Virus record (IMG/VR): IMGVR_UViG_3300042308_001511 | Location: 124,001-188,000 of that record | DNA length: 64,000 nt | Direction: 5' to 3' (one strand) | Part shown: positions 12,504 through 57,891 of the stretch, piece after piece | Layout of the letters: each line of letters starts with the position of its first letter | How positions within the stretch are numbered: the stretch's first letter is position 1 | Made by a program: the position numbers and the translations under genes | The notes under the pieces: model-generated | The model's database searches: none | Seen by the model: only the letters and a program-made list of their open reading frames with translations | What the model was told of the DNA's origin: nothing

Positions 12504-13409
12504 ATGAAGATGAATGTACTTTCACTATTTGATGGCATATCGTGTGGTAGAATAGCACTCGAAAGAGCCGGTATACCTTGTAACTATTGGGCAAGTGAGA
12601 TTGATGAAAAGGCGATTGAAGTTTCTGCAAAAAACTGGCCAGAAATAGTTCATATGGGTGATGTCACCGAACTATACGATCAAATTGTAAACTTACCTAA
12701 GATAGATTTGCTTATTGGTGGTAGTCCTTGTCAATCATTTTCTAATGCTGGTAAAGGAGAAGGTTTCCAGGGTAAGAGTGGTTTGTTTTGGGAGTTTGTA
12801 AGGATAAAAGAAGCTACTGAACCGAGATACTTTATGCTTGAAAATGTAAGTATGAAGCGTGAGTGGAGAGACCAAATAAGTGAGGCACTTGGAGTTGAAC
12901 CAGTGATGATTGATAGTAAAATCGTGAGTGCACAGAACCGAAAACGATTATACTGGACAAATATACCATTGAAGGATACCATTGAAGATAGAGGACTCTA
13001 CTTAGATGATGTTGTTGAGTGGGATGTAGATCCAAAATACTGGTTACCTCAGAAGAATACAGATATTCTAAATAGGAAAGTAGATATGAAGGGAGCACCA
13101 GATTTATGTGCAATTGATGTATATAACAAAAGGTATAAGACGGATGGAAGGTGTCAGACAATTACACACCCATGTCATAATACAATTAGGCTTTGGCAAG
13201 ATGGTAAGTTTAGGAAGTTCACACCACTTGAATATGAGAGATTACAGAACGTTCCTGAAGGATATACCGCAGGTCATTCTGACACAATTAGAGGTGGCTT
13301 CTTGGCAAATGGATGGACAGTGGATGTTATATCATATATATTTGGTCAAATGTTGGAAGATATGAAGAAGGTTTATGAAAATCAAAAGTCATTTCAATAT
13401 CCCATTTAG
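12504..13409 (+). CDS. DNA (cytosine-5) methyltransferase
   Basis: LSLFDGISCG, GGSPCQSFS, LENV, QNRKRLYW, ANGW. Confidence 0.93.
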   Translation: MKMNVLSLFDGISCGRIALERAGIPCNYWASEIDEKAIEVSAKNWPEIVHMGDVTELYDQIVNLPKIDLLIGGSPCQSFSNAGKGEGFQGKSGLFWEFVRIKEATEPRYFMLENVSMKREWRDQISEALGVEPVMIDSKIVSAQNRKRLYWTNIPLKDTIEDRGLYLDDVVEWDVDPKYWLPQKNTDILNRKVDMKGAPDLCAIDVYNKRYKTDGRCQTITHPCHNTIRLWQDGKFRKFTPLEYERLQNVPEGYTAGHSDTIRGGFLANGWTVDVISYIFGQMLEDMKKVYENQKSFQYPI

Positions 13410-13949
13410 TAAATAATCTCTATTATCCTCTTTTGATTTGTGAAACCAGATTGTTTTTTGATAAGCTTTTCGTAACTCTTTCCACCCTGGAAGTGCGTCC
13501 CAATGTCCGTAGACGTGAACTGAGTCGTCCCAAATTATTATCCTCTCAATTTCGGTCTGCCTCTCGCTCGGCCAGTCTGTGTAAGTTTTTTCATTACCGT
13601 TATTATCGGTGTACGTAAACTCATACTCTCGCTTGTTCTCCCAACTTCTCCTGACGTTGTAGAAGTCAATCTCAAGTGCCATATCCAAAAGTCGGTCGTT
13701 TAGGTATATCGCAACTCTCGGATAGTGTAAAACTGCATACGATCCAGATTTCCTGTCATGCATCCACTCGATGTGTTCATAAAGGAAGAATTGGCCTTTT
13801 TTTACCTTACTACCGATGAGGTCGTATTTGTCGGTCTTCAGGTCGAATCCGTTAAAAGTCCACTCTTCGCCTCTATTATAATCAGGAAGTTCTGACGTTG
13901 GATATTTTGATACGATAAGTTCTGTTATATTCATTTCTTTTTTTTTCAC
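13389..13949 (-). CDS. Hypothetical protein with C-terminal tag
   Basis: Ends RDYLLNGILK. Confidence 0.65.
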   Translation of the reverse strand: MKKKEMNITELIVSKYPTSELPDYNRGEEWTFNGFDLKTDKYDLIGSKVKKGQFFLYEHIEWMHDRKSGSYAVLHYPRVAIYLNDRLLDMALEIDFYNVRRSWENKREYEFTYTDNNGNEKTYTDWPSERQTEIERIIIWDDSVHVYGHWDALPGWKELRKAYQKTIWFHKSKEDNRDYLLNGILK

Positions 13950-13958
13950 GAATTTAAA

Positions 13959-13989
13959 AAGAAAATCCCGTTTTCACGGGATTTTTCTT
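13959..13989. terminator. Intrinsic terminator downstream of dnaK
   Basis: aaaatcccg-ttttca-cgggatttt. Confidence 0.6.
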
Positions 13990-14003
13990 AGGTATATTTT
14001 CTA

Positions 14004-15902: not shown

Positions 15903-15947
15903 TTATTTTTATTTTTATTTTTACTTATCAAAAACTACACCAAAACA

Positions 15948-16022
15948 AAAACCTGACATAATTTTTATTTGTTGTCAGGTTTTATGACATAATATTCTAT
16001 TTGTTGTCAGGTTTTATGACAT
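15948..16022. repeat. Two 25-bp direct repeats, each containing TGTCA-N7-TGACA, plus an inverted half-copy, upstream of dnaK
   Basis: tatttgttgtcaggttttatgacat at 15966-15990 and 15998-16022; aaaacctgaca at 15948-15958. Confidence 0.85.
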
Positions 16023-16060
16023 TTCACAAATATTATTGTTGTTTATTTTATTTTATTTTC

Positions 16061-16068: not shown

Positions 16069-16085
16069 TTTTTAAAAATATCTAA

Positions 16086-17006
16086 ATGGGAAGCTTTTAC
16101 CTTACGTGCTCGATTTCGCACATGACTCTAACAAATCAAAAGACCAGTGTCCAACTTTTGATACCGAAGATGGACTACAAAGGAAACACCGAACTCAAAG
16201 AGCACAAAAACCTTATATGTACCAATGACGGTGCACAAGCATTCTTCTCGCCTTTCGGATTTCCAATCAAAGGAGAATACTATGACTATGGATACATCGA
16301 CGAGATTCAGAGAGATAAGAATGTTGAACAACTCGAAGAGTTCTTTGGTGGTAGTATAGATGATATAATCAAACACATTGGTAGAAAACGCGACTGGACA
16401 CCACCGAAGAACGAGCAGATTTACGAGCAACTACACATGACCTTTTTCCGTACAGAGGTACTCGAGTTTCTGGAGAGGGGATGGGACACAATAAATCTGA
16501 CCGACCCGTATGATTACTCGGGCGACGCCTACCTTAAGAAGTTCATAGAACTCGTTACAAAAGCACCGACCATGTTGCAGAAAGCGGAGGTTATCGAGAA
16601 GAGGTCAAAAGGTGAGGAGCTGACAGAGGACGAGTATGAAATTATGTTCCACTCGGAATACGAAGTCTTCGGATCGAGCAACTGTTACATAAAGTCCACG
16701 ATGGACAGGAACTTCTTGAAACTGCTCGGGGTGGACATAGAGGTGCAGTTAAACGACGTACTGAAACAGTCTACTTTCTTGACAAGATTTGGATGGGGGT
16801 TAGACAGGATACTTCTACCTTCGGTCTATGGATCACAGGAAACCAACTTCACGGAGACGTACTTACTGAACGACTTCGTCAACGACCTACTAGTACAGGA
16901 TATGGAAAACGAATACGATGACTATGACGAAGATGGTAACTCCGAGAAAGAGAGGATAATCAAATCACATAACAGGAACAAATCACTAAGAGAATTAGGA
17001 ATATGA
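16086..17006 (+). CDS. Hypothetical protein with C-terminal tag
   Basis: 306 aa, ends RNKSLRELGI. Confidence 0.7.
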   Translation: MGSFYLTCSISHMTLTNQKTSVQLLIPKMDYKGNTELKEHKNLICTNDGAQAFFSPFGFPIKGEYYDYGYIDEIQRDKNVEQLEEFFGGSIDDIIKHIGRKRDWTPPKNEQIYEQLHMTFFRTEVLEFLERGWDTINLTDPYDYSGDAYLKKFIELVTKAPTMLQKAEVIEKRSKGEELTEDEYEIMFHSEYEVFGSSNCYIKSTMDRNFLKLLGVDIEVQLNDVLKQSTFLTRFGWGLDRILLPSVYGSQETNFTETYLLNDFVNDLLVQDMENEYDDYDEDGNSEKERIIKSHNRNKSLRELGI

Positions 17007-22010: not shown

Positions 22011-22517
22011 ATGAAATTATTTGACATATTCAAAAAGAAGAAGCCTGTACAGCAGGAGACTATTCCGAACAAAAAGAAGAAACTGGTGCTCGACAAGGAG
22101 ATGGATTTTCCTGAGTTAGAGAAGTTCGACGAAGATAGATATCTAGCAGACACCTTCGAAGATGTGTTCCGGGCGATACGTTACGACGGTTGGAAGCGCG
22201 AGTTCACGAGTTACGGCGAGATGCACTTCTCGAAGGATCGCGTCCAGGTGAAGATACACTTCTCGGACTGGAGGACGTTCTACATAAAGAGGATCGAGTT
22301 ATATTCCGGATACACTACCTTCATATACAAGGACGAACTGGACGTGGACCACTATAATATGTTCTACGAGATCTACCGTGACTTCGTCATTAAACAGAAC
22401 GAGGTAAAGAAGAATAACATTGAGAAGAGTATGGCACAGATACGCAACGCACTGGGTAAGGACGTACTAAGGGACAGTAAGATTGATATGCTACTGAACT
22501 CGGATGATGTTGAATAG
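22011..22517 (+). CDS. Hypothetical protein with C-terminal tag
   Basis: Ends RDSKIDMLLNSDDVE. Confidence 0.65.
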   Translation: MKLFDIFKKKKPVQQETIPNKKKKLVLDKEMDFPELEKFDEDRYLADTFEDVFRAIRYDGWKREFTSYGEMHFSKDRVQVKIHFSDWRTFYIKRIELYSGYTTFIYKDELDVDHYNMFYEIYRDFVIKQNEVKKNNIEKSMAQIRNALGKDVLRDSKIDMLLNSDDVE

Positions 22518-24739: not shown

Positions 24740-25180
24740 ATGGTAACACAAAGAGATTTCAATAGGGACTTACTCAGGAAGGGTGAGCTTATATGCAGAA
24801 ACAGCCAGTTCTGTAAAGGAAAAGAAGTAGGTATACACAATCGTATGTTTGGTGGTGATTTACTACAAGAATTAGACTCCGTTTGTGCAGTTTTTGCGGC
24901 TGAAGTCTGTGACACTCCATGGATTGTAACCAAATCAATGAATGTTGAGTTTGTAAGTGAAGTGAGACCGAACCAGATTTACAAAACATACGTTGGTATA
25001 AAAAAAATTGGTGGTACTTCTATAACATTAGTCGCTGAGATACGAACTCATTCAGTAGATACTGAAAAAGAGAAACTTGCTATAAAATGTGAGACGGTTT
25101 TTGTACGTATAAACGAATATGGAGAGGCTATAAAGATAAACGACAATGTTCGTACAAACTACCCAGAACTTTCTAAATGA
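24740..25180 (+). CDS. Hotdog-fold acyl-CoA thioesterase (YciA-like)
   Basis: MFGGDLLQELD, VTKSM, IGGTSI, VFVRI. Confidence 0.8.
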   Translation: MVTQRDFNRDLLRKGELICRNSQFCKGKEVGIHNRMFGGDLLQELDSVCAVFAAEVCDTPWIVTKSMNVEFVSEVRPNQIYKTYVGIKKIGGTSITLVAEIRTHSVDTEKEKLAIKCETVFVRINEYGEAIKINDNVRTNYPELSK

Positions 25181-26264: not shown

Positions 26265-26486
26265 ATGATTTATATTTATAAACCACGTAGTGAATGGCAC
26301 AGAAGATTTGATTTAACTGAAAATAAATCATATGACTGTGAATGGAATGGTCAAATGGTTTATTCATCTGATGGTATTTACTTTAAGTTGATTAGTGATT
26401 TAGACAAAGAGATTGAGGTTCATGAAAGTCATTTCATACCACTTGATAAATTTCGAGAAAATAAATTAAAAGAAATAGGGAAATGA
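26265..26486 (+). CDS. Small hypothetical protein with C-terminal tag
   Basis: Ends RENKLKEIGK. Confidence 0.6.
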   Translation: MIYIYKPRSEWHRRFDLTENKSYDCEWNGQMVYSSDGIYFKLISDLDKEIEVHESHFIPLDKFRENKLKEIGK

Positions 26487-26525: not shown

Positions 26526-26756
26526 CTATAGTCCTATATCACGAAACCTTTTTTCCCTAATACGTTCTATAAATTCTGCCTTAGTCTCCAAATTTATCTG
26601 TTCGGTATTGTAGAAGCCACCTTTAGTTGATGTTATACTATATAGATGACCGACGGTATCAATATTTGCCTCGCCTACTATACCAATCCAGTTAGTAGGT
26701 CCATATGGTGAGTTATATGTAAATGTGGCACCAATTGGCCAGTCATCTGGCATCAT
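26526..26756 (-). CDS. Small hypothetical protein with C-terminal tag
   Basis: Ends REKRFRDIGL. Confidence 0.6.
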   Translation of the reverse strand: MMPDDWPIGATFTYNSPYGPTNWIGIVGEANIDTVGHLYSITSTKGGFYNTEQINLETKAEFIERIREKRFRDIGL

Positions 26757-27394
26757 AATCCAAGTTCATTTAGTTTCAATTCTCTCAATACACTTTTATC
26801 AGGTTCCCAACCATAAAGATAAGTGTGATTCGGATTTACACCGACTGCATTCCATTTATCTATCAATTCTTCGGATTGGTAATTGATATGATTATTGTTA
26901 CTAATACCAATAAAACCTGTTGTTGTAGGTTCAAAACCATCCGCGAAAAAATCCTGTATGAAACAAGAGAACTCTTCGAGTATTATTTGTGCATGATCCT
27001 CTTCACGTCGTTCATCGTCATCGTCATCAAACCTTTGCTGTTTCATTCTTCCGAGCTTCACCAATTCATCTATTACGTCGCCGATAACGTCCGAGTTTCC
27101 GAATGGTCTTTTATAACCCATATTGGTTCCCTCATCACCTTCTTCTATATAGATTGTAGATAATAATGCCATATGAACATCTATGTTCTCTGAGTATTTT
27201 TCTACAACAGATTTTTTTGGCTTTGCTGTGATTGCCAACATCTGCATCTCTGTACTAAGATTTGTATCCCATGTAACCATATGTGAGTAATACGAACTTT
27301 CGGTTACACATGATTCTACACTACGTATCTCGTCGAGTTGTTTCTGAGTTATATTTATTCGTTCACCGGTTTTAGGCATATAAAGGTTTCTCAT
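26753..27394 (-). CDS. Hypothetical protein with C-terminal tag
   Basis: Ends RELKLNELGL. Confidence 0.65.
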   Translation of the reverse strand: MRNLYMPKTGERINITQKQLDEIRSVESCVTESSYYSHMVTWDTNLSTEMQMLAITAKPKKSVVEKYSENIDVHMALLSTIYIEEGDEGTNMGYKRPFGNSDVIGDVIDELVKLGRMKQQRFDDDDDERREEDHAQIILEEFSCFIQDFFADGFEPTTTGFIGISNNNHINYQSEELIDKWNAVGVNPNHTYLYGWEPDKSVLRELKLNELGL

Positions 27395-28867: not shown

Positions 28868-29287
28868 TCATTTACCGTTCTGTTTTTCGAGTTTTATGAG
28901 GTGTGTTAGTTCCTCTTTTATAATCTCTGGGTATCTCCTACATAAGTAGTTGAGGTCGTGTTCATCAATTTTTAGGTGTTTTCTGAGTGACTTACTTTCT
29001 TTGTCAGTGAGACCTTCTTTTTCCTTTTTAGGTGATTTTGACCAAAAGTTGTCTGGATAAGGTTGTGTTTTCATAAACTGAAACCAAAGTTCCATAGCAG
29101 TAACTTTGTCTATGTTTTTGAGATTCAGTAACTGTGCTTTCTCTGGATAAGTCTTCGAGAAATAACGGTTGAAAATAAAAAAGTTCAATTCCTTAATTTC
29201 ATCAGTTATTTTGTTTCCCTCCCGGTCGTATATCCAATCCTTCTTTATTCTGAACATCGCGTTCGCCACATCCGTTATCTTCGCCAT
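28868..29287 (-). CDS. Possible clamp-loader small subunit (T4 gp62-like)
   Basis: FFIFNRYFS..AQLLN..FW.K pattern and size resemble the gp62 family. Confidence 0.4.
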   Translation of the reverse strand: MAKITDVANAMFRIKKDWIYDREGNKITDEIKELNFFIFNRYFSKTYPEKAQLLNLKNIDKVTAMELWFQFMKTQPYPDNFWSKSPKKEKEGLTDKESKSLRKHLKIDEHDLNYLCRRYPEIIKEELTHLIKLEKQNGK

Positions 29288-29702
29288 CTATCAAATCGTT
29301 TATGAGTTTGTGTCTATTCCATTTCCTGTCAACCATCGACAAGAAGTCTAGTCCGAATATTTCTATCATCTCATCATCGGAAAGTTCATCACTGAAAGTT
29401 GTTCCAATTGGAACTCTCTGACCATCAGACTGCACCAATACGAACTCACCGGTCTTATTACAATATTCGTGACCGACTAATCCGTACCTGGTGGGGTCTT
29501 GTATCCTAAGTTTGATGTCTGATATCCTCTTTGGTAGATATTCTTGTTCATCATTACAGACACACCATTGACAATAGTAACAGAGTATCCTGAGAAGTGT
29601 ACTATCCCGCTGGTGCCATCCGAATACCGGTGCCACTACACTTATCCATTGAACGTAGTAGTGGTCAAGCCGGCTATTATCGAAAATTTCGGTAGATGAC
29701 AT
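29202..29702 (-). CDS. Hypothetical protein with near-C-terminal tag
   Basis: RHKLINDLI followed by a tail overlapping the next gene. Confidence 0.55.
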   Translation of the reverse strand: MSSTEIFDNSRLDHYYVQWISVVAPVFGWHQRDSTLLRILCYYCQWCVCNDEQEYLPKRISDIKLRIQDPTRYGLVGHEYCNKTGEFVLVQSDGQRVPIGTTFSDELSDDEMIEIFGLDFLSMVDRKWNRHKLINDLIDGEDNGCGERDVQNKEGLDIRPGGKQNN

Positions 29703-35025: not shown

Positions 35026-35656
35026 AAGCCATAACCTTAGTCATAAACTCGAACAGGTCGTTTGTGTGCTTCCTAACCGCGTCCTGATGATTACGCAGTC
35101 CGTAGTTGTTCTCAACGAATCTCATCTTCCAATCAATCACCTCCATATAGTCCGATACCTTTATCCCGTCGAAGTCGTGTGAGTAGTTGTGGTTGTCAGT
35201 TCCTATTATATCGAACCACGTATGGAAGTAGTCAAACTTCTTGTGTCCGTAAGAGTCATAGCCACCATAGTGACCAGTGTGAAAATCAACCGTGCACACT
35301 GTGTTCTCAACAGTTACCTTATTGAAGTCGTTCATACCACAAAACTTCATAAAGTTATCACGTGTCAACAACCAGTCCTGATCCGCACCAGCCCTGTCGA
35401 AAACAGGCTTTCCGTTCAAAGTGTACAGAGACAACGCACTGGAACCCGTCAGTATTCCGTCCAGGCTGTTAATCTGAAACAAGAACTTCTTTTTGTTTCT
35501 TTTGAAGATAGAGGTCTTCATGAACCTCCTCTTCCTGTCAACGAGTGTAGGTAATATCTCAGGTCCGTCACCGAGTGCCTGAGTGCACTTGAAGTCACGT
35601 AGCCACGACTTCACTTCCAAAGCCTTAGGATCCGTTAGATTATTGTTTAGTGTCAT
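35018..35656 (-). CDS. Possible Pol-beta-superfamily nucleotidyltransferase
   Basis: ILTGSSAL followed by DQD (hG[GS]..DxD pattern). Confidence 0.4.
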   Translation of the reverse strand: MTLNNNLTDPKALEVKSWLRDFKCTQALGDGPEILPTLVDRKRRFMKTSIFKRNKKKFLFQINSLDGILTGSSALSLYTLNGKPVFDRAGADQDWLLTRDNFMKFCGMNDFNKVTVENTVCTVDFHTGHYGGYDSYGHKKFDYFHTWFDIIGTDNHNYSHDFDGIKVSDYMEVIDWKMRFVENNYGLRNHQDAVRKHTNDLFEFMTKVMAFS

Positions 35657-36189
35657 AGTATCGAGTTTATCTGTATCTCACGCCATAATGTCGACCACTC
35701 GGCTCTCACATCTTCTGGGTATGTCCAGACTTCGTTACCACCATTGTAGTAGTCTGTGTAGTAGTAGAAGACCGATTTAGTCATACCGTCGTAAACCTCC
35801 TTAGCGATTTCCATACACTCGTTCTCCGAAATCCATTCACACAAATTCTTTATTAGGTCGAAATCAACCTTCGTTGATACTTTACGCCAATTTGCGTTTA
35901 TATAAGTCCTAAGGTAGTGTCTGATTGTTCTTTCTTTCCAACTGCTCACTCCGGATGGGTCAGCATCGTCAGGATAAGCCATAAAGAATTTGACGTCCTT
36001 TTTCTGTGCCTCTTTTATGACTTTCAATACCTGTCTCGTTATTTTCAGGTCTAAGAATATGTAGGCTTGGTCGTCGAGGTTGAAATAAGCCACAGGTAAC
36101 CATATGCCATTATACCGGTAGTAAAGCATTCCATTGCTTCTAACCTCATAATCGGCACCGTTGCCAGGTATCAAATCATCAATCTTCAT
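35653..36189 (-). CDS. Hypothetical protein with C-terminal tag
   Basis: Ends REIQINSIL. Confidence 0.65.
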   Translation of the reverse strand: MKIDDLIPGNGADYEVRSNGMLYYRYNGIWLPVAYFNLDDQAYIFLDLKITRQVLKVIKEAQKKDVKFFMAYPDDADPSGVSSWKERTIRHYLRTYINANWRKVSTKVDFDLIKNLCEWISENECMEIAKEVYDGMTKSVFYYYTDYYNGGNEVWTYPEDVRAEWSTLWREIQINSIL

Positions 36190-36496: not shown

Positions 36497-36526
36497 AAAG
36501 GCAAATATAAGGAAAATATATAACCT

Positions 36527-36778
36527 ATGGATGAGAATACAAAAGAAAAGTTGATAGAACTCGGTTTCACATACAACAAATCCGAAGAACATTGTATGAT
36601 GAAACATGGAAAGGGTAGATTGATTGTTTGGAAGAACTTGTCTACACCAGGATACTGTCTCGCTTATGATGATAAGAAAGGAATGTCAATACTAATGAGA
36701 ACAAACATAGATATTATATGTGAGGAAATTAGGTCTCTAATAAGAGATGCACGCATCGATGAAGTACTGGGAAATTAA
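36527..36778 (+). CDS. Small hypothetical protein with C-terminal tag
   Basis: Ends RDARIDEVLGN. Confidence 0.6.
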   Translation: MDENTKEKLIELGFTYNKSEEHCMMKHGKGRLIVWKNLSTPGYCLAYDDKKGMSILMRTNIDIICEEIRSLIRDARIDEVLGN

Positions 36779-40907: not shown

Positions 40908-42248
40908 ATGAGTCAAAAATCGATAACAGACTTCCTAGCGGATGAGTACAAAGAGTTCGCAATGTACACAATTGAGGGTCGAGCCATACCATCCGTCATA
41001 GATGGTTTCAAGCCGACTGCCAGGAAGATAATACACGTAAGTGCCAACATTTGGCGAACTGGACAAGAGAAACCATTGAAGGTATTCCAACTTTCTGGTA
41101 AAGTGGCGTCGGATGCATTTTACCATCATGGATCTTCCAGTTTGGAAAACGCCATCATAACAATGGCACAGAAGTTTAAAAATAACGCTCCACTTCTTGA
41201 AGAGATAGGACAATTTGGATCTCTGAGATCTCCTCAGGCTGCGGCACCTCGATATATTGGAACCAAACTGAACAACAATTTCAGGTTACTCTACAAAGAC
41301 TTTGAACTACTCGACTTCAAAGAAGAGGAAGGTGAAGCGATTGAACCAAAATACTTTTTACCAATTATACCGACAGTATTGATTAATGGATCACAAGGTA
41401 TATCTGTTGGGTTCACTTCAAATGTATTGAACAGAGATGTGAAGGGTATAACAGATGCTTGTATTGATATATTGAAAGGTAAAGAACCAAGAGAAGTCAA
41501 ACCGTCACTCAATGAATTTACTGGTGAATTTACAAGAGATGTTGATAATCACAAAAGGTGGTTGATACGTGGTAAGTTTCAACGAGTAAATACTTCTACT
41601 ATTAGAATAACGGAATTACCACCATCATTGACATATGAGAAATATGAAGAGATTCTTGATGAATTATGTGAGAAAAAGAAGATTGTATCTTACGATGATA
41701 ATTGTGCTGACAACGTTGATTTTACTATAAAATTCACAAGATCTGACTTAGAATCATTAGACGATGAAAAAATTGTAAAGTTATTGAAACTTGAAGAGGC
41801 AGAAACGGAAGCCTTCTCTACTTTGGATGAGAATGGTAAACTTAAAATATTCAATAGTGCATCTGATATAATAAAATACTTTGTAGAATTCAGACTCAAC
41901 TACTATCATAAGAGGAAAGCATTCTTACTTGATAGAATGAATAAAGACCTCAAAATTCTTAGTAATAGAGGAAGATTCATCAAGGCAATACTCGATGAAA
42001 AGTTGAAGATAAACAATGTTCCTAAGGCAGAGATAGTAAAGGGTATAGAGTTACTCGGATTAGACCTGATAGAAGGAAACTATGATTACTTACTCAGGAT
42101 GCCAATCTACTCATTGACACAGGAACTTTTCGAGAAATTAAAAGCAGATTTCACTGCAAAAAAGGTAGAGATAAAGAAATTAGAAGAAACCGAACCTAAG
42201 GATATGTACTTAGACGACTTAGACGAGTTGAAAAGAAAGTTCAAATGA
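40908..42248 (+). CDS. DNA topoisomerase II medium subunit (T4 gp52-like)
   Basis: RAIPSVIDGFKP, YHHG, AAAPRY (catalytic Tyr), ITELP. Confidence 0.95.
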   Translation: MSQKSITDFLADEYKEFAMYTIEGRAIPSVIDGFKPTARKIIHVSANIWRTGQEKPLKVFQLSGKVASDAFYHHGSSSLENAIITMAQKFKNNAPLLEEIGQFGSLRSPQAAAPRYIGTKLNNNFRLLYKDFELLDFKEEEGEAIEPKYFLPIIPTVLINGSQGISVGFTSNVLNRDVKGITDACIDILKGKEPREVKPSLNEFTGEFTRDVDNHKRWLIRGKFQRVNTSTIRITELPPSLTYEKYEEILDELCEKKKIVSYDDNCADNVDFTIKFTRSDLESLDDEKIVKLLKLEEAETEAFSTLDENGKLKIFNSASDIIKYFVEFRLNYYHKRKAFLLDRMNKDLKILSNRGRFIKAILDEKLKINNVPKAEIVKGIELLGLDLIEGNYDYLLRMPIYSLTQELFEKLKADFTAKKVEIKKLEETEPKDMYLDDLDELKRKFK

Positions 42249-42592
42249 TGGCTGAAATGTGGACAATCATATCACATATAGAGTCTCCATTTATGGAGGA
42301 AGGTTCAATAATATTTGAGATGCAGGATTCTTATTGGTACCTCGAAGCAGATCCTTACAAAATACGAGAGGTTGTGAATATGCCATCTTATATTGTTTCG
42401 GATTGGCTTTGGGCTAACAGGAAACCACTTGATGAGAAAACGATCGAATCACATATAATTCGAAAAGAGGCCGAAGCCAAATATGACTCAATGCAAGCCA
42501 AACCTGGAAGTCCGAGTCTTATATTAGAAAGTCTTAGAGCATTGAAGAGGGACCTTTTGATTGGTCTGGTGTTAAGAAACGATTCTGAATAA
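42245..42592 (+). CDS. Hypothetical protein with C-terminal tag
   Basis: Ends RDLLIGLVLRNDSE. Confidence 0.6.
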   Translation: MMAEMWTIISHIESPFMEEGSIIFEMQDSYWYLEADPYKIREVVNMPSYIVSDWLWANRKPLDEKTIESHIIRKEAEAKYDSMQAKPGSPSLILESLRALKRDLLIGLVLRNDSE

Positions 42593-47077: not shown

Positions 47078-47299
47078 TTGGAAGAAATTGAGTTTGAGGC
47101 GATATGCGTCAGGACATACTTCTGTGAGAAGATGGGAGGAACAGTAAGGTTCAAAAGGGGTGACCGTGTGAGATACAAAAAGTTTGGTAACTTCGTTATA
47201 ATAGACGGGTGTCTGGACGTGTTCAAAACACAGTTCGAGAGGTACTTCAAAGACGTGTCGGATTTGAGAGAGGAAAGGATTAACGAGATACTTGATTGA
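47078..47299 (+). CDS. Small protein with C-terminal tag
   Basis: Ends REERINEILD. Confidence 0.6.
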   Translation: MEEIEFEAICVRTYFCEKMGGTVRFKRGDRVRYKKFGNFVIIDGCLDVFKTQFERYFKDVSDLREERINEILD

Positions 47300-47972
47300 T
47301 ATGAACTATGAATTTTTGAGCGTGGAAGATATGGTCATTGCTGTGTCGGATACGCTTTCCTTCGTATGTAGGGGAATAACGAACACGGTTGATGGGCAGA
47401 CGCTCAGGTTCTACGACCGTGAGCTCGTCGTCATTGGTAAAGAGAAGGCGATTGCGAAGCGTGTCTTCTACGTTCCGGATCAACACGCTGGTAAGGTCAC
47501 ACGTATGAGAAGGGTGACTACAGGTGAGGAGTACGACCGTGACGTTAAGTGTTGGAGGAAGGTTATCCCAGATCGAGAGATTTACAGCGGTGGGTATATG
47601 GACGTCAGTACAACCAAAGAGCTCAACTTCGGCTACTACACCAAAACCACAAAGACTGACCACGTCAGCATAGGTATCTGGTCTGCCAGTTATGGCATAC
47701 AGAAGGATCAATTGAGGAGTGCACTAACTGAGTTCATCGGAGGACTATCCAAAAGTAAGAGGAAGACACTTAGTAGAGCGATTATCAAATATCAGAACAG
47801 ACTTGAACTCTTCAAAAGACTATGTAAGATATTCAGGATAACAGTTCCAGTCGAAGTCGGACAGAAGCGAGTAGAGATGTCGTTCTACGGTGTCGAGTCG
47901 ATACCGACAAAGGAGGAGGAAAGAGATAGAATAATAGCGGACATAATAAGTTCGAAACGAATAATAGAATAG
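47292..47972 (+). CDS. Hypothetical protein with C-terminal tag
   Basis: Ends RDRIIADIISSKRIIE. Confidence 0.6.
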   Translation: MIDMNYEFLSVEDMVIAVSDTLSFVCRGITNTVDGQTLRFYDRELVVIGKEKAIAKRVFYVPDQHAGKVTRMRRVTTGEEYDRDVKCWRKVIPDREIYSGGYMDVSTTKELNFGYYTKTTKTDHVSIGIWSASYGIQKDQLRSALTEFIGGLSKSKRKTLSRAIIKYQNRLELFKRLCKIFRITVPVEVGQKRVEMSFYGVESIPTKEEERDRIIADIISSKRIIE

Positions 47973-47973
47973 T

Positions 47974-48738
47974 ATGGAAGGAACTGGTAAACTCAGAATG
48001 AGTGATAGCTACATATTCGGCTGGAATAGCAGAATATATGAGGCACCCAAGGATATGAACGTTATGGTATCTGCTGTTTACACGAACGGTACTGGTATAG
48101 ATGTGAAAATAAGACCGAATATCAGTAATGGTATGATAACGCCATCGATGGGTGAAACAACCGATGAGGTTCTTTTGGACCCACCGGTGAAATACAAAAT
48201 TGTGTTCTCGGTGTCGAAGGATTGTATAGAAGAGTTCGACGAGATAATGAATATGTTGTTGGAACGAAATTTCGACAACGAGGTCTGGAAGAATTCAAAA
48301 AAGAAAGAGACTGTGGTTACTACTAAATCAGTGGTAAAGACTCAGACGGATCACAGGATAGGTAAGGTCGATTATGTACGTTACGAGTGGAAAATGATTG
48401 GATCTCTTTCTGAGGTTATGGCACTATGTTATATTATAGAGAGTTCGGTTGATATATTTGGTAAGTGCTGGGGTGTGACCGAGGATGGTGAGAAGGTTTG
48501 TCAGATGAAGTATCCGATTGGAAGTATTGTATGTGTGGATAACGACAAGTCTACCGATTTCCTGGTATTGGATTGGCACTTCGACCTGTTGAGTCCAAAT
48601 TTCCATCATAGTTATGATGTGGTTTCCATAGTTGAGAAACCGGGTTCAGCGGTTGTTGGTTATGACAGGAGACAGATTGTGAATGAGAGTAGAATTTCGT
48701 GGTCGAGGAACAGTAGAATTGATGACATATTAGAATGA
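47974..48738 (+). CDS. Hypothetical protein with C-terminal tag
   Basis: Ends RNSRIDDILE. Confidence 0.65.
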   Translation: MEGTGKLRMSDSYIFGWNSRIYEAPKDMNVMVSAVYTNGTGIDVKIRPNISNGMITPSMGETTDEVLLDPPVKYKIVFSVSKDCIEEFDEIMNMLLERNFDNEVWKNSKKKETVVTTKSVVKTQTDHRIGKVDYVRYEWKMIGSLSEVMALCYIIESSVDIFGKCWGVTEDGEKVCQMKYPIGSIVCVDNDKSTDFLVLDWHFDLLSPNFHHSYDVVSIVEKPGSAVVGYDRRQIVNESRISWSRNSRIDDILE

Positions 48739-48950
48739 GTATCTACGATAGCTACGATGCTAATAAACTTAGTTGGTCTAAATTGACTGAGGAGGTGTTC
48801 TATAACGGCGTTCCGTTGGGTATGACGATGGAACAACTGGCAGACTATAAGGTTATGACCGGCGGTGGAAACATATTGACTATAATAATGGATAGGTATT
48901 ATGAGGTTTTACCGGATTGGCGTAATGGTAGGCTTGACGAGATACTTTAA
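48735..48950 (+). CDS. Small protein with C-terminal tag
   Basis: Ends RNGRLDEIL. Confidence 0.6.
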   Translation: MSIYDSYDANKLSWSKLTEEVFYNGVPLGMTMEQLADYKVMTGGGNILTIIMDRYYEVLPDWRNGRLDEIL

Positions 48951-48961
48951 TTTTACTATAT

Positions 48962-49465
48962 TTGCTTATGAGGAAGTGGAACGATTTTGAGTTGACCGAC
49001 TATCTCCGTGAAGAGAGGATGAACTGCTATTATTTCTGGTCCAAAGGAAAGATAACTAGGAAAAAATCTCACGAAGGAATATACGAACAGAACCTAGCTG
49101 GAACCTGTGAGTGGAACGGCATCAGACTCAAAAACGGGTTCAACATAATATTCAACAGATTCTTAATAAAATATACTATGGAAGGAAAATGGAACGGCCA
49201 AAGTAAAGCTGAATATTTGAAAAATTATAAAAGAATAGAAGATATCATCTCTAAATCAGATGGTGATGTTGATAAACAAGAGAAACTTGCAAAATTACAA
49301 GCCAATAAAATAAAAGATGAATGGAAAGCCATAAACCGAGCAATTGCAGCAAAAGATATGGATTATGAAAATATCTTTGAAATTTTCTTCCAAAGAGCCT
49401 ACGAATTAGGATCCGTATCAAAACAGGAATATAGAGAATACCAAATGGATAAACTGGGTATATGA
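48962..49465 (+). CDS. Hypothetical protein with C-terminal tag (start uncertain)
   Basis: Ends REYQMDKLGI. Confidence 0.55.
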   Translation: MLMRKWNDFELTDYLREERMNCYYFWSKGKITRKKSHEGIYEQNLAGTCEWNGIRLKNGFNIIFNRFLIKYTMEGKWNGQSKAEYLKNYKRIEDIISKSDGDVDKQEKLAKLQANKIKDEWKAINRAIAAKDMDYENIFEIFFQRAYELGSVSKQEYREYQMDKLGI

Positions 49466-55221: not shown

Positions 55222-56894
55222 CTTATAAAAGAATTTATATTCTAACACCACCAGGTGTGGTTACGGGTGGACCTGAAGCTATTTACCAATTATGTGATTC
55301 AATCAATTCGTTGGGAGGTAATTGTTTTATACTTTTTAAGTATGAACATTTAAATCCTTTTCCGGAAGAATATCATCACTATAATATAAATCAATGCTAT
55401 TATAGTGATGATATAAACAAATCTGATAATTTAATAATAGTTCCTGAGATATGGACGGGAAGTCTTTATGAAGATGGTTATAATAATATGTCTAAGGCTA
55501 TTTGGTGGCTTAGTGTAGATAATTGTTATGATCGTGATTATATTCAATTGACGGATGATGTTCTACATTTATACCAATCTGAATATGCAAAATCGTTTCT
55601 CAGTGGTAGAGGTTTAGTTAATATTTTTCCACTATTTGATTATATCAATGATGATTTTTTATTAACAGAGAATTTTGATAAAAAAAATATTATTTGTTAT
55701 TCTACTAAGGGTGAAGTGGAGGCTAAACAAATAATGGAGTATTTACCAGAATATGATTTTGTTATGCTGAAAGATATGACAAGATTAGATGTTATTAATA
55801 AGTTGAAAGACTCTAAAGTTTATATAGATTTTGGAAATCACCCTGGTAAAGATAGAATGCCTAGAGAATCTGCGGTATTTGGTAATTGTTTAATAACAAA
55901 TCGTAGGGGTTCTGCTAATTTCAAAGAAGATATTCAAATACCAGATAGTTACAAATTATCCGAATTTGATCTAGTACAAATTTCAGAGTTGATAAGAGAT
56001 TGTATTGATAATTACGTTATTAGAAATTTGGATTTTTTTGATTATCGAAATATAATCAAAGGACAGAAAGATGAGTTTTTTGACCAAGTAAAAAAGTTAT
56101 TTATAATGGAAAAAGAAGAGATTTCTGATAACTTTATCGATAAACAGACAATTGATAGATGGTTTAGTTCTAAAACGGTTTGTGATTCTCAATTATCATC
56201 GTTTGTTAATAACAATCAGTTTACTAATAAGAATCCAAATTATACGGATATTTGTAAAACTTTGTTTAGGTGTGATGATGTTTATCAAAATTATGTAATT
56301 AAAGAGAGAAGACCTTTGATGTATTATCCACCACATATAGGAAGCTCAACTATACGTAAGATGGTTGATATGTTGGGACATCTTCCTAAATTAGGAATTG
56401 AAGTTGGAAGTTTTATTGGATCTAGTGCGGTATTTCTTGGTGATTTTATGAGAATATCCGGTGGTGTTCTTGTGTGTGTTGATACATGGTGTGGTGATAT
56501 CAATATGTGGCTTTTAGATTCTTTTCAAGATACTATGGCAAAATATGATGGTGATCCTAAAATATATGAATTATTTATGCAGAATATTATAGATAATAAA
56601 TTACAAGGTACGGTAATTCCTTTGCGTTTAACTTCTATAATTGCAGCACGAATGCTCAGAATATTGAATTATGAGATTGATTTTGTTTATGTTGATTCTG
56701 CACATGAGGCAGGTGAGACTTTTATGGAACTTATGCTTTATCATGATATTCTTAAGGATGGTGGTGTTTTGTTCGGTGATGATTATGAAGGTTTCCCAGC
56801 TGTTAAATATGACGTTGACTTATTTTGTAAACGTTTTGGTTATGTTCTCGAATTCACTGGTGATGGTGATACGTGGATGATAAAAAAATGTTAA
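55218..56894 (+). CDS. Glycosyltransferase-like domain fused to a class I SAM methyltransferase
   Basis: TGGPEA..WWLSVDN..HPGKDRMPRE; IEVGSFIGSS, CVDTW, YVDSAH, GGVLFGDDY. Confidence 0.75.
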   Translation: MTYKRIYILTPPGVVTGGPEAIYQLCDSINSLGGNCFILFKYEHLNPFPEEYHHYNINQCYYSDDINKSDNLIIVPEIWTGSLYEDGYNNMSKAIWWLSVDNCYDRDYIQLTDDVLHLYQSEYAKSFLSGRGLVNIFPLFDYINDDFLLTENFDKKNIICYSTKGEVEAKQIMEYLPEYDFVMLKDMTRLDVINKLKDSKVYIDFGNHPGKDRMPRESAVFGNCLITNRRGSANFKEDIQIPDSYKLSEFDLVQISELIRDCIDNYVIRNLDFFDYRNIIKGQKDEFFDQVKKLFIMEKEEISDNFIDKQTIDRWFSSKTVCDSQLSSFVNNNQFTNKNPNYTDICKTLFRCDDVYQNYVIKERRPLMYYPPHIGSSTIRKMVDMLGHLPKLGIEVGSFIGSSAVFLGDFMRISGGVLVCVDTWCGDINMWLLDSFQDTMAKYDGDPKIYELFMQNIIDNKLQGTVIPLRLTSIIAARMLRILNYEIDFVYVDSAHEAGETFMELMLYHDILKDGGVLFGDDYEGFPAVKYDVDLFCKRFGYVLEFTGDGDTWMIKKC

Positions 56895-56957
56895 TAAAAT
56901 ATCTAAGTAGAGCCACCAAACGGTGGTTTTTCTTTTTAATTGTAATCTCGTCGAGTA

Positions 56958-57332
56958 CTATATAGAGACGTATGCGTCTATAAACTCTTCACCACTTTGG
57001 TATTTCACCAGAGTTCTGTTGTATCCGTCCATCACCTCTCCGTTTAGTATGACAATCGGGTTGTCTATCTCGTCGTAGTGTGGTACGTAATCCTCTTCCT
57101 CATATCTGTCCGCGTCATTCTCTACGTATTCTCTTAGGTCTGGATCACTTTCGAGAAGATCTTCTATTCTCATCTCTCTCAGTTCGAAGTCACGACCTTC
57201 TCTTTCTATCAACGTCAGGAAGTAGTCTGGGATTGTTGTCACCGGGTTGTCTGATACCTTCTTTATGTAATCGATTATCTCTTCTGAACTAAGTCTGTTC
57301 GAGCTATGTTCTAAAAATGTCATTATTCTCAT
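56958..57332 (-). CDS. ParB/sulfiredoxin-like domain protein with N-terminal tag
   Basis: PIVI..VMDGYNR; starts MRIMTFLE. Confidence 0.6.
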   Translation of the reverse strand: MRIMTFLEHSSNRLSSEEIIDYIKKVSDNPVTTIPDYFLTLIEREGRDFELREMRIEDLLESDPDLREYVENDADRYEEEDYVPHYDEIDNPIVILNGEVMDGYNRTLVKYQSGEEFIDAYVSI

Positions 57333-57390
57333 TACTTATATATTATTCCTGTTGTGCAACATATTAACATCTGTTCATATAATATTCTCT

Positions 57391-57891
57391 ATGAGTATTA
57401 TTATGACACACAACGCGATATTTATTGGTAAAGTAGATACTGATAACCAGAATGAGAGGTATAGTTTTTCGTGTAACCTCAGAATTGACGAGACTAACGG
57501 ACAGAGTACTGCGGTTATGATGAGGTCTTCAAATGAGGGTACTCTGAGGTTCAAAAATATAAAAGACAAAATTTCATCTCTTGGTAAATTAGAGAGGTTT
57601 GATATGGTGGTATTCACTTCTATCTGGTCGAAGACGACAGTTTGTGATGTTTATGCGATAGAGTTCGTTGACTATAAGAAAAAGGTCAGTATGAATGAGT
57701 TTAACGACCTTGGTTTAGGACCTAATATAGATGAGAGACTCGAGGTTAGGCTGAGTGGAGGTTGGACTATTGATGTCGGTAATCGTGATAAACTTGCTGG
57801 TATAGTGGTTGGTTTTGGCGAACCATTCCCATCTGAGAATGATTTGGCGGCAATCCGTCGTGAAATGAAGTTAGGTGGTCTTTTAGGTTAG
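57391..57891 (+). CDS. Hypothetical protein with C-terminal tag
   Basis: Ends REMKLGGLLG; start taken at the internal ATG (MSIIM). Confidence 0.6.
   Translation: MSIIMTHNAIFIGKVDTDNQNERYSFSCNLRIDETNGQSTAVMMRSSNEGTLRFKNIKDKISSLGKLERFDMVVFTSIWSKTTVCDVYAIEFVDYKKKVSMNEFNDLGLGPNIDERLEVRLSGGWTIDVGNRDKLAGIVVGFGEPFPSENDLAAIRREMKLGGLLG

What the first reader, a model, noticed from the sequence alone, without database searches (positions are those of the whole stretch)
13389..57891. A shared C-terminal peptide tag on about 16 otherwise unrelated proteins
Seen: the consensus R-[DEN]-x-x-[IL]-x-x-[ILV]-[LG] lies within a few residues of the stop in 13389 (RDYLLNGIL), 16086 (RNKSLRELG), 22011 (RDSKIDMLL), 26265 (RENKLKEIG), 26526 (REKRFRDIG), 26753 (RELKLNELG), 35653 (REIQINSIL), 36527 (RDARIDEVL), 42245 (RDLLIGLVL), 47078 (REERINEIL), 47292 (RDRIIADII), 47974 (RNSRIDDIL), 48735 (RNGRLDEIL), 48962 (REYQMDKLG) and 57391 (REMKLGGLL). 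A looser copy (RHKLINDLI) lies about 24 aa before the stop in 29202. The bodies (71-306 aa) share no obvious similarity and the codons differ, so this is a protein-level signal rather than a DNA repeat. It is absent from every recognisable enzyme here and never co-occurs with the N-terminal tag. Five consecutive genes (47078-49465) carry it. Inference: an amphipathic docking helix used as a portable address for a common phage or host hub (scaffold or compartment, RNA polymerase, protease adaptor), or a degron.
Basis: partly seen in the sequence, partly recalled or inferred. Interest (0 to 1): 0.85.

Follow-up and report, generated by a model that had tools for sequence, protein, structure and literature searches.

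The report
Shared C-terminal address tag, huge phages
About one in seven genes in this stretch of a giant Bacteroidota-type phage encodes a small unknown protein ending in the same ten-residue peptide, apparently a portable address label, and related phages put it on at least 150 unrelated protein families.

Summary
All 15 cited ORFs end in R-[DEN]-x-[KRQ]-[LI]-x-x-[LI]-[L/G/I]. Eleven of 13 strict matches in the window lie within 6 residues of a C-terminus (binomial 6e-15; shuffles give 0.03).

The bodies are unrelated by BLASTP and HHalign and have no significant Pfam or PHROG hit. Orthologues keep the tag through many synonymous changes, so selection acts on the peptide.

The window is part of a 344-kb phage contig. 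In related huge-phage contigs I found 268 tagged proteins in 150 body families. A pattern scan found 56 viral stretches, but in 596 Gb of cellular genomes only one phage-like fragment.

In the complete 635-kb relative LR745206.1:
- 83 of 990 ORFs carry the tag.
- They cluster in arrays.
- None lies in the 160-kb T4-like structural and replication core.
- None of the 70 proteins with an N-terminal tag resembling the T4 capsid-targeting sequence also carries it (p=0.003).

Best reading: a portable C-terminal docking peptide for one clade-specific receptor. The receptor is unidentified. Candidates are the prohead interior (cargo loading), a phage AAA+/VWA-peptidase or Hsp70 machine, or the sliding clamp (PIP-like spacing). 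I found no prior description.

The parts
13389..13949 (-). 186-aa ORFan immediately downstream of the phage dnaK; tag RDYLLNGIL+K encoded at 13395-13421
   Evidence: 21.5 bits; orthologues keep it in L049 and LR745206 (RDIQLNRLL)
16086..17006 (+). 306-aa ORFan divergent from dnaK; tag RNKSLRELG+I at 16974-17000
   Evidence: 19.6 bits; no significant Pfam or PHROG hit
22011..22517 (+). 168-aa ORFan; tag RDSKIDMLL at 22470-22496, followed by a 6-aa polar tail
   Evidence: 21.5 bits
26265..26486 (+). 73-aa ORFan; tag RENKLKEIG+K at 26454-26480
   Evidence: 17.6 bits
26526..26756 (-). 76-aa ORFan; tag REKRFRDIG+L at 26532-26558
   Evidence: 19.5 bits; LR745206 orthologue ends RDRRLNDIGI
26753..27394 (-). 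213-aa ORFan; tag RELKLNELG+L at 26759-26785
   Evidence: 22 bits; LR745206 orthologue carries the other subtype, RNIKIEKIL+DI
35653..36189 (-). 178-aa protein conserved next to topoisomerase II in the clade; tag REIQINSIL at 35656-35682, ending at the C-terminus
   Evidence: 19 orthologues, tag region among the most conserved; AF2 pLDDT 89 with the tag at the end of helix 159-177; no PDB fold match
36527..36778 (+). 83-aa ORFan; tag RDARIDEVL+GN at 36743-36769
   Evidence: 22.3 bits; homologue in L018 ends RDKRLSELLGE
42245..42592 (+). 115-aa ORFan overlapping the stop of topo II subunit A; tag RDLLIGLVL at 42548-42574, followed by 5 aa
   Evidence: 15.7 bits
47078..47299 (+). 73-aa ORFan, first of five consecutive tagged genes; tag REERINEIL+D at 47267-47293
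   Evidence: L002 orthologue identical in tag, synonymous changes
47292..47972 (+). 226-aa ORFan; weakest member, tag RDRIIADII at 47922-47948, followed by 7 aa
   Evidence: 14.1 bits; leave-one-out -3.2; conserved in L002 as RDRIISDLI
47974..48738 (+). 254-aa ORFan; tag RNSRIDDIL+E at 48706-48732
   Evidence: 13 homologues at 59-98% identity keep R, N, R, I, D, I, L invariant
48735..48950 (+). 71-aa ORFan; tag RNGRLDEIL at 48921-48947, ending at the C-terminus
   Evidence: 25 bits; L002 orthologue has a diverged body and RERRIDEIL
48962..49465 (+). 167-aa ORFan; tag REYQMDKLG+I at 49433-49459
57352..57891 (+). about 166-179-aa ORFan; tag REMKLGGLL+G at 57859-57885
   Evidence: L002 orthologue has the same 15 terminal residues with 10 synonymous codon changes
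29202..29702 (-). 166-aa ORF with a doubtful tag-like peptide RHKLINDLI at 29289-29315, 28 aa before the stop
   Evidence: 13 bits, outside the usual 0-10 aa distance; not counted as a member
56958..57332 (-). 124-aa ORF with the only strong internal match, REMRIEDLL at 57153-57179 (residues 52-60)
   Evidence: 18 bits; internal hits occur at chance level overall

Best explanation
The peptide is a portable C-terminal address label, a short linear docking motif. Each carrier is a small, fast-evolving accessory protein (median about 100-140 aa) of a clade of huge, AT-rich phages with a T4-like core. Its last 10-12 residues follow the consensus (K-S-E-h)-R-[D/E/N]-x-[K/R/Q]-[L/I]-[N/D/K]-[E/D/K]-[L/I]-[L | G-I/L], usually followed by 0-2 residues and then the stop.

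Shown:
- The signal is at protein level, is tied to the C-terminus, and is under strong purifying selection.
- It sits on at least 150 unrelated bodies.
- The LG-I and IL-x subtypes interchange between orthologues.
- Carriers cluster in translationally coupled gene arrays outside the structural and replication core.
- Carriers never also bear the N-terminal M-K-Y-L-K-x-F tag.

Inferred: the segment forms one to two turns of amphipathic helix. Its aliphatic positions 5, 8 and 9/10 plug into a hydrophobic groove of a single receptor, while R1, K4 and the acidic or amide position 2 give specificity. The receptor is probably phage-encoded, because the tag is confined to one phage clade, is missing from a sister group, and is absent from cellular genomes.

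Receptor, in my order of preference:
1. About 0.3: an assembly intermediate of the T4-like head, so that tagged proteins are loaded as cargo and co-injected. This would be the C-terminal counterpart of the T4 capsid-targeting sequence and of encapsulin cargo-loading peptides.
2. About 0.25: a phage remodelling or proteolysis machine, either the MoxR-type AAA+ with the DUF2201 VWA-metallopeptidase or DnaK/DnaJ/GrpE.
3. About 0.1: the phage sliding clamp.
For: Positional enrichment: window, 11 of 13 hits at the C-terminus, P=6e-15. In 43 related loci, 98 of 105 PSSM hits lie within 10 aa of the end and 80 within 0-2 aa. In the complete genome LR745206.1, 83 hits are C-terminal against 19 internal in 201,185 aa.

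Protein-level selection: synonymous codon turnover with invariant residues. The tag is invariant in 13 homologues at 59-98% identity. Window versus LR745206 orthologue pairs are 6 tagged-tagged, 29 untagged-untagged and 0 discordant, at 27-51% body identity.

Portability: 150 body families, HHalign <8% between families, and no significant domain hits apart from 4 small DUF-type ones.

Helix: in the AF2 model the tag ends helix 159-177 at pLDDT about 85-93.

Clade restriction: 56 viral stretches, against only one phage-like fragment among cellular genomes. The tag is absent from the group whose topo II is about 55% identical, L033-L037 and L041.

Class behaviour: exclusion from the 100-260 kb T4-like core; clustering of 18 adjacent pairs against 6.9 expected; mutual exclusion with the N-tag, p=0.003.

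Precedent: T4 internal proteins are a diverse set sharing only a capsid-targeting sequence (PMC3012670, PMC9026906). T4 IpI starts MKTFKEF, like the N-tag here.
Against: No receptor was identified and no binding was tested.

Against the cargo variant:
- About 6-7% of tagged proteins have N-terminal transmembrane helices with the tag predicted to face the cytoplasm.
- Tagged proteins are mostly acidic (median pI 5.3), whereas from memory the T4 internal proteins are basic.
- 83 C-tagged plus 70 N-tagged proteins would make a very large virion cargo.

Against a freely exposed peptide: in the one confident model the tag continues a long, well-predicted helix and may pack on the body. I could not inspect the coordinates.

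Ile at position 8 is always ATA, and Gly at position 9 is mostly GGA or GGG. This hints at an additional nucleotide-level constraint near the overlapping start of the next gene.
Confidence: 0.7

Rival explanations
1. Degron or tethering peptide. The tag hands the protein to an AAA+ unfoldase, protease or chaperone, for timed removal or remodelling of early accessory proteins. Alternatively, tagged proteins act as adaptors that bring their own targets to that machine.
For: Terminal location, as in known C-terminal degrons and the SspB tether (established knowledge). It would work for soluble and membrane-anchored carriers alike. The clade encodes a MoxR-type AAA+, a DUF2201 metallopeptidase/VWA protein at 51667-53259 and a complete DnaK/DnaJ/GrpE set. 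Tagged genes lie directly after dnaK and between grpE and dnaJ.
Against: The last residue and the distance to the carboxylate vary, with 0-10 aa of polar tail, unlike ssrA-type pore recognition. Conserved acidic residues fit DnaK substrate rules poorly (memory). Adjacency to chaperone genes is only suggestive, given that 8-16% of genes are tagged and that they cluster.
Confidence: 0.2
2. PIP-box-like sliding-clamp-binding motif. The tag docks proteins on the phage's (or host's) DNA sliding clamp.
For: The spacing [D/E/N]-x-x-[L/I]-x-x-[L/I]-[L] equals Q-x-x-[LIM]-x-x-[FY]-[FY]. Distant orthologues of the 35653 family end in R-Q-I-K-L-N-[IL]-F-F, a canonical PIP box. T4 places its clamp-binding peptides at the C-termini of gp43 and gp55. 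The clade has gp43- and gp44-like genes.
Against: No tag is present on any recognisable replication protein examined: FEN/RNase H-like, topo II subunits, the gp44-like clamp loader and the gp55-like sigma. The carriers are ORFans, some of them membrane-anchored. No clamp gene was found. A different peptide that resembles the T4 motif, L(P)FD[LI]V, follows the gp55-like gene in relatives. More than 80 clients per genome would compete with the replisome.
Confidence: 0.1
3. Remnant of common ancestry or a structural cap. All carriers descend from one fast-evolving family, or convergently use the same terminal helix as part of their fold.
For: Some carriers are clear tandem paralogues, such as the 11 copies in L110. 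In the 35653-family model the helix is long and confidently predicted.
Against: Lengths run from about 40 to 730 aa. Some carriers have TM helices and others do not. BLASTP and HHalign find nothing between families. Conservation is confined to about 10 residues anchored to the stop codon rather than to any upstream element.
Confidence: 0.05
4. Nucleic-acid-level element. The conserved 3' end serves translational coupling or initiation of the next gene, or is a recombination cassette boundary, and the peptide is a by-product.
For: Among tagged genes, 22% end in ATGA overlaps, against 9% of others. Ile at position 8 is ATA in 9 of 9 cases, and Gly-9 codons give an AGGA-like string 4 nt before the next ATG.
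Against: Arg is encoded by AGA, AGG, CGT and CGA, and Leu by five codons. Orthologues change many third and first positions without changing the peptide. The tag is equally present on convergent and last-in-operon genes such as 26265 and 26526. Stop-codon usage is not distinctive (p=0.08).
Confidence: 0.03

Closest known systems
Capsid targeting sequence (CTS) of phage T4 internal proteins (IPI, IPII, IPIII, Alt)
   Same: A roughly 10-residue terminal peptide is the only thing shared by a diverse, fast-evolving set of small phage proteins. It is portable to foreign proteins (PMC3012670, PMC9026906). The phage here has T4-like head genes.
   Different: The T4 CTS is N-terminal, is removed by the prohead protease and marks only a handful of proteins. 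This tag is C-terminal, has an unrelated sequence and marks 8-16% of genes. The separate N-terminal tag of this clade (M-K-Y-L-K-x-F) is the one that resembles the T4 CTS.
Encapsulin cargo-loading (targeting) peptides
   Same: They are short C-terminal peptides that dock unrelated cargo proteins to the inner face of an HK97-fold shell (PMC7925596, PMC8346489). Phage capsids share that fold.
   Different: The consensus is different. Encapsulins usually have one or a few cargos encoded next to the shell gene. Here dozens of carriers are scattered in arrays far from the capsid gene, and encapsidation is untested.
PIP box and T4-type C-terminal clamp-binding peptides
   Same: Terminal location, identical hydrophobic spacing and many possible clients for one ring-shaped hub. 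Distant orthologues show a canonical Q-x-x-L-x-x-F-F.
   Different: The main clade has D/E/N instead of Q and aliphatic or Gly residues instead of the aromatic pair. The tag is absent from the replication enzymes examined. T4's own motif (S-L-D-F-L-F/Y) is different.
C-terminal degrons and adaptor tethers of AAA+ proteases (ssrA tag, SspB ClpX-binding tail)
   Same: A short C-terminal peptide determines the fate of otherwise unrelated proteins.
   Different: There is no resemblance to the known motifs (recalled from memory). The last residues are variable and polar extensions are tolerated. No stability data exist.
Encapsulation peptides of bacterial microcompartments
   Same: These are amphipathic helices, placed at either the N- or the C-terminus, that address unrelated enzymes to one protein shell. 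This parallels the mutually exclusive N- and C-tags seen here.
   Different: I saw no microcompartment shell genes. The carriers here are not enzymes. The comparison rests on memory of that literature.

Membership tests
T4-type capsid targeting sequence | Located at the extreme N-terminus as a 10-19 aa propeptide | tested here: not met
   The tag lies 0-10 aa from the C-terminus; no strict match starts within the first 7 residues
T4-type capsid targeting sequence | Sequence M-K-T-[FY]-[KQ]-E-F with hydrophobic residues at positions 4 and 7, followed by an [LI]-x-E cleavage site | tested here: not met
   The C-tag consensus is R-[DEN]-x-K-[LI]-x-x-[LI]-[LG]. [LI]-x-E occurs inside only about a third of tags (E at position 7 in 21 of 59). 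T4 IpI N-terminus.
T4-type capsid targeting sequence | Directs the protein into the prohead core | not testable with these tools
   No virion proteome or cultured relative is available
Encapsulin cargo-loading peptide | Short peptide at the C-terminus of otherwise unrelated cargo | tested here: met
Encapsulin cargo-loading peptide | Cargo gene adjacent to an HK97-fold shell gene; binds the shell interior | tested here: not met
   In LR745206.1 the gp23-like capsid gene lies at 200.7-202.4 kb, inside the 160-kb zone that has no tagged gene. Binding itself is not testable.
PIP box / clamp-binding motif | Q-x-x-[LIM]-x-x-[FY]-[FY] | tested here: not met
   In 59 families position 2 is D, E or N (never Q) and positions 8-9 are L/I and L/G/I. 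It is met only in distant orthologues of one family.
PIP box / clamp-binding motif | Present on polymerase, nuclease or other replisome clients of the clamp | tested here: not met
   No tag on the FEN/RNase H-like protein, topo II subunits, gp44-like or gp55-like proteins. The C-terminal part of the polymerase was not found.
PIP box / clamp-binding motif | A sliding clamp is encoded or available | tested here: inconclusive
   A gp44-like clamp loader is present. T4 gp45 finds no homologue by phmmer or tblastn.
ssrA-type / ClpX C-terminal degron | Conserved non-polar last residues with the free carboxylate at a fixed distance | tested here: not met
   The residue after the motif is K, E, D, N, I, L or G, and the tail length is 0-8 aa across the 59 family representatives and up to 10 in the wider set
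ssrA-type / ClpX C-terminal degron | Confers instability | not testable with these tools
   Needs fusion-protein half-life measurements
Single homologous protein family (paralogues) | Detectable similarity or a shared profile outside the motif | tested here: not met
   BLASTP and HHalign <8% probability

The most novel reading that the evidence does not exclude
These huge phages may run a proteome-wide two-label addressing system. A T4-CTS-like N-terminal tag sits on about 7% of proteins and this C-terminal tag on another 8-16%, never together. In this reading the C-tag loads dozens of unrelated small effector proteins into the giant capsid for co-injection as a pre-packed host-takeover or anti-defence arsenal. 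Alternatively it routes them to a phage-built compartment or machine. Either way, one short peptide would define the whole accessory 'effectorome' of the clade and would be a ready-made handle for delivering foreign cargo.
Probability: 0.25. Interest if true: 0.9.

Novelty: new variant of a known kind. Interest (0 to 1): 0.8.

Why it matters
Most genes of huge phages are small ORFans with no handle for study. A ten-residue label sorts about a tenth of the proteome of a widespread gut and environmental phage clade into one functional class, covering at least 150 families. That gives a direct experimental entry point: peptide pull-down, tag fusions, and a phyletic search for the receptor. If the receptor is the prohead, the tag identifies the injected protein arsenal and offers a portable packaging signal for Bacteroidota phages. 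If it is a protease, chaperone or clamp, it reveals a hub through which the phage controls dozens of effectors. The scale is unusual for phages: T4's capsid-targeting sequence marks only a handful of proteins.

Tried and rejected
- Pfam, PHROGs and NCBIfam on 15 window carriers, 36 + 102 family representatives and the array beyond the window. Only 4 hits to small, mostly uncharacterised families.
- AF2 of the 47974 family was unusable (pLDDT 43).
- The AF2 model of the 35653 family was good but matched no PDB fold. Profile searches against PDB sequences were empty.
- Search for the hub:
  - I walked the source contig and a near-identical relative left and right.
  - I searched the complete relative LR745206.1 with T4 gp43, 44, 45, 55 and 62 and with T4 head and tail proteins.
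  - A clamp loader, a polymerase fragment, the portal, the capsid protein and the terminase were found. No clamp, scaffold or prohead protease was found.
  - Candidates next to the clamp loader turned out to be gp15-like or unknown.
  - A conserved 205-207-aa protein next to the AAA+ gene has no match.
- Stop-codon hypothesis (termination stalling or read-through): stop usage is not distinctive.
- Candidate tag in 63297: rejected (2.5 bits).
- Literature: six full-text searches found no description of this tag. The Jug-phage paper (PMC12880540) does not mention it and no supplements are held.
- Membrane-targeting helix: considered and set aside, because of the conserved acidic residues and because some carriers already have TM anchors.

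Full report
**1. The observation.** Translating the 16 cited ORFs shows every quoted peptide at the stated place. I made a simple non-overlapping gene set: 95 ORFs, 94% coverage, 19,929 aa. Eleven of these end 0-6 residues before the stop, two are internal and none is N-terminal.

If matches fell uniformly along the proteins, the chance of at least 11 of 13 landing there is 6e-15. Two thousand residue shuffles give a mean of 0.03 C-terminal matches. Among 284 ORFs of at least 50 aa that are not in the gene set there is a single match, which is the real small gene 36527.

An 11-column scoring matrix built from the 15 peptides separates members (14-25 bits) from all other positions. The exceptions are one internal site in 56958(-) and the weak, misplaced copy in 29202(-).

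**2. Protein level, not DNA level.**
- Arg is encoded by AGA, AGG, CGA and CGT, and Leu by five codons.
- Seven orthologue pairs between the window and a relative at about 63% identity (L002) keep the peptide while changing many codons synonymously. In 57352, 10 of the last 15 codons change.
- Thirteen database homologues of 47974 (59-98% identical) have R, N, R, I, D, I and L invariant.
- Two small oddities remain. Ile at position 8 is ATA in 9 of 9 cases (genome usage 51%), and Gly at position 9 is mostly GGA or GGG.
- Tagged genes end in ATGA overlaps more often than other genes, 22% against 9%. Some nucleotide-level constraint from the next gene's start may therefore be superimposed.
- Stop-codon usage is not distinctive (p=0.08).

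**3. The bodies are unrelated and unknown.**
- Window all-vs-all BLASTP finds no similarity between tagged proteins beyond the tag itself.
- HHalign between seven multi-member families, with the last 14 residues removed, gives <8% probability for every pair.
- No tagged protein has a significant Pfam, PHROG or NCBIfam hit. Four of 102 further family representatives hit small, mostly uncharacterised families.
- Many untagged proteins of the window do match families. These include Hsp70, PEPCK, both topoisomerase II subunits, the RNR small chain, methylases, dCMP deaminase, NusG, UvdE, a FEN-like nuclease, rhomboid and a CCA/polyA polymerase.

**4. Where the window comes from.**
- It is positions 124,001-188,000 of a 344,083-bp viral contig, IMGVR_UViG_3300042308_001511, which is JGI 3300042308 Ga0453162_0000001.
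- The closest GenBank records are the complete uncultured huge-phage genomes LR745206.1 (634,780 bp) and LR756502.1, with topo II B 73% identical. Lak megaphages are distant at 38%.
- The recently described Bacteroides 'Jug' phages (PMC12880540) are a plausible neighbourhood. That paper does not mention the tag.

**5. The tag is a clade-wide system.**
- *Related loci.* In 43 loci around topo II homologues (1126 ORFs, 236,962 aa) the window-derived matrix finds 105 hits of at least 12 bits. Eighty are 0-2 aa from the end, 18 are 3-10 aa from it, and only 7 are internal.
- *Beyond the window.* Just right of the window, 12-13 of 18 consecutive small genes carry the tag, mostly as R-[DN]-x-K-L-x-E-L-G-I. 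Two of them have N-terminal TM helices. Left of the window, two tagged genes sit between grpE and dnaJ.
- *Pattern scan.* A degenerate DNA pattern for R-[DN]-x-K-L-x-E-L-G-I plus a stop finds 56 stretches in the viral collection. Almost all lie at the ends of 25-212-aa ORFs, on contigs of 4-483 kb with 22-40% GC. In 596 Gb of bacterial and archaeal genomes it finds three stretches. Two are chance matches. The third is a 4.2-kb phage-like fragment with 11 tandem tagged paralogues.
- *Pooled counts.* I counted 268 tagged proteins in 150 body families.
- *Consensus.* Over 59 families: K at -4 (22 of 59), R1 and [DEN]2 in all, [KRQ]4 in 85%, [LI]5 in 95%, [NDK]6, [EDK]7, [LI]8 in 97%, and L, G or I at 9. 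When position 9 is Gly, an Ile or Leu follows in 18 of 19 cases, and in 15 of those it is the last residue. Tail length is 0-2 aa in 46 of 59.
- *Sister groups.* A sister group whose topo II is about 55% identical (L033-L037, L041) has none in about 180 ORFs. More distant orthologues of the 35653 family end in R-Q-I-K-L-N-[IL]-F-F.

**6. Whole-genome view (LR745206.1).**
- Of 990 ORFs, 83 (8.4%) carry the tag at the C-terminus. Nineteen internal hits in 201,185 aa are what chance allows at this threshold.
- Tagged genes are adjacent more often than expected: 18 pairs against 6.9, with a maximum of 15 in 2000 permutations.
- No tagged gene lies between 100 and 260 kb. That zone holds the T4-like core: homologues of gp5, UvsW, gp47, gp19, gp18, gp17, gp44, gp4, gp20, gp23 and gp43.
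- Window versus LR745206 orthologue pairs are 6 tagged-tagged, 29 untagged-untagged and none discordant, at 27-51% body identity. In one pair the ending switches from L-G-L to I-L-D-I, so the two subtypes are interchangeable.
- Tagged proteins are small (median 110 aa in this genome, 139 aa in the topo II loci) and mostly acidic (median pI 5.3, the same as other small proteins). About 7% have TM helices, which is no different from the background.

**7. The second label.**
- Many proteins start M-[KR]-[YH]-[LI]-[KR]-x-[FY]-[NDE]-E.
- In LR745206.1, 70 ORFs do so, against 5 matches beyond residue 30 in 171,485 aa.
- None of the 70 has the C-tag, whereas about 6 would be expected by chance (Fisher p=0.003).
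- T4 IpI begins MKTFKEF. In T4 the first 10 residues of the internal proteins are the capsid-targeting sequence, with positions 4 and 7 critical (PMC9026906). The N-tag therefore looks like a T4-type CTS.
- N-tagged genes also occur inside the core zone, unlike C-tagged genes.

**8. Structure.** AF2 on the 19-member 35653 family gives pLDDT 89 and pTM 0.84. The tag forms the end of a 19-residue C-terminal helix. The fold matches nothing in the PDB. The 47974 family model failed. On a helical wheel, L/I5, L/I8, R1, K4 and K-4 fall on one face and D/E2, N/D6 and E7 on the other. This wheel was drawn by hand from the consensus and was not computed.

**9. What it most likely is.** Everything shown fits a portable, terminal docking peptide read by one receptor. 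The general class is known: the T4 CTS, encapsulin cargo-loading peptides, microcompartment encapsulation peptides, PIP boxes and degrons. This sequence, its C-terminal use in a phage and its scale are not, as far as six full-text searches could tell.

The receptor is inferred to be phage-encoded. The tag is restricted to one clade, is missing from a sister group and is absent from cellular genomes. I rank the candidates as follows.
- **(a) Prohead or capsid cargo loading, about 0.3.** For: the T4-like head genes, the T4 precedent of diverse internal proteins that share only a tag, the small size of the carriers, and mutual exclusion with a CTS-like N-tag, as if one ticket were enough. Against: TM-anchored carriers, acidic pI, and the sheer number of carriers.
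- **(b) Hand-off to a phage AAA+/VWA-metallopeptidase or to the phage DnaK/DnaJ/GrpE system, about 0.25.** For: these genes are present and interleaved with tagged genes, and it would work for membrane proteins. Against: the tag is unlike known degrons or Hsp70 substrates.
- **(c) Sliding clamp, about 0.1.** For: the PIP-like spacing and canonical PIP boxes in distant orthologues. Against: no replication enzyme carries the tag, no clamp was found, and a different, T4-like peptide follows the gp55-like gene.

Chance, common ancestry and a purely nucleotide-level role are each unlikely, for the reasons given above.

**10. Limits.**
- Gene calls are my own greedy ORF calls, except where the collection's calls were available.
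- The matrix was trained on the window and applied to relatives that include orthologues, so counts of proteins are not independent events. That is why I give family counts.
- The loci fetched by the pattern scan were chosen for containing a tag, so their density (155 of 1043 ORFs) is biased. The unbiased figures are 8.4% (LR745206.1) and 15-16 of 96 (window).
- No binding, localisation or stability data exist.

Noticed in passing
window 32403, 33699, 34435, 39350, 42882, 58176, 59508 (looser: 7174, 18322, 19209, 20059, 39984, 42622); LR745206.1 genome-wide: An N-terminal tag, M-[KR]-[YH]-[LI]-[KR]-x-[FY]-[NDE]-E, sits on about 7% of proteins (70 of 990 in LR745206.1). It is almost never internal and never occurs with the C-tag. 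It resembles the T4 capsid-targeting sequence (IpI starts MKTFKEF).
   Followed up: partly
window 14004-15902 (-); L049 15998-17044 and 18486-19025 (just left of the window): The phage encodes a complete Hsp70 system: DnaK (Pfam E=2.6e-249), a full-length DnaJ and GrpE. Tagged ORFans lie directly downstream of dnaK and between grpE and dnaJ.
   Followed up: partly
window 51667-53259 (+); L047 15505-16662 (contig 191.7-192.8 kb): A DUF2201 metallopeptidase/VWA protein and a MoxR-type AAA+ ATPase, with a conserved 205-207-aa partner of unknown fold, recur across the clade. This may be a remodelling machine and a candidate tag receptor.
   Followed up: partly
window 29702-31309 (-), 43447-44070 (+), 25177-26262 (+), 60497-61672 (+); L050 13671-15275: Unusual auxiliary genes for a phage: ATP-dependent PEP carboxykinase, a rhomboid protease, UDP-galactopyranose mutase, a CCA/polyA polymerase and a class I (Gln/Glu-type) tRNA synthetase.
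   Followed up: no
window 3767-5584 (-), 8671-10479 (-); L047 13373-15292: Three roughly 600-aa paralogues with DUF7487 (one also Mom-like) are scattered between conserved genes. One separates the AAA+ gene from its partner. They may be mobile or selfish inserts.
   Followed up: no
LR745206.1 189151-189649; L063, L091, L096, L106: A 121-aa gp55-like late sigma (Sigma70_r2, E=0.005) always ends G-x-G-L-H-S-L. A conserved peptide, L(P)FD[LI]V..PGF, is encoded just downstream in another frame, or in L091 in the same frame after the stop. It resembles T4's C-terminal clamp-binding S-L-D-F-L-[FY]. This may reflect a frameshift, read-through or intron.
   Followed up: partly
tag codons, e.g. window 16995-17006, 26475-26486, 49454-49465: Ile at tag position 8 is ATA in 9 of 9 cases (51% genome-wide). 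Gly-9 is usually GGA or GGG, which gives AGGA about 4 nt before the ATG of the overlapping next gene. This looks like a secondary nucleotide-level constraint.
   Followed up: partly
L110 (JAQVPR010000238.1, 4.2 kb, binned as Cloacimonadota): Eleven tandem, translationally coupled 63-77-aa paralogues (MKVICI...FITL[DE]EYR[ND]K[KR]LxELGI) all carry the tag. The contig looks like a mis-binned phage fragment.
   Followed up: partly
window 36179-36607 (-) versus 36527-36778 (+): The longest-ORF call on the minus strand overlaps the tagged gene 36527. The relative's gene call starts at an internal Met (MRGIAWRR), which removes the overlap, so both genes are probably real and divergent.
   Followed up: yes
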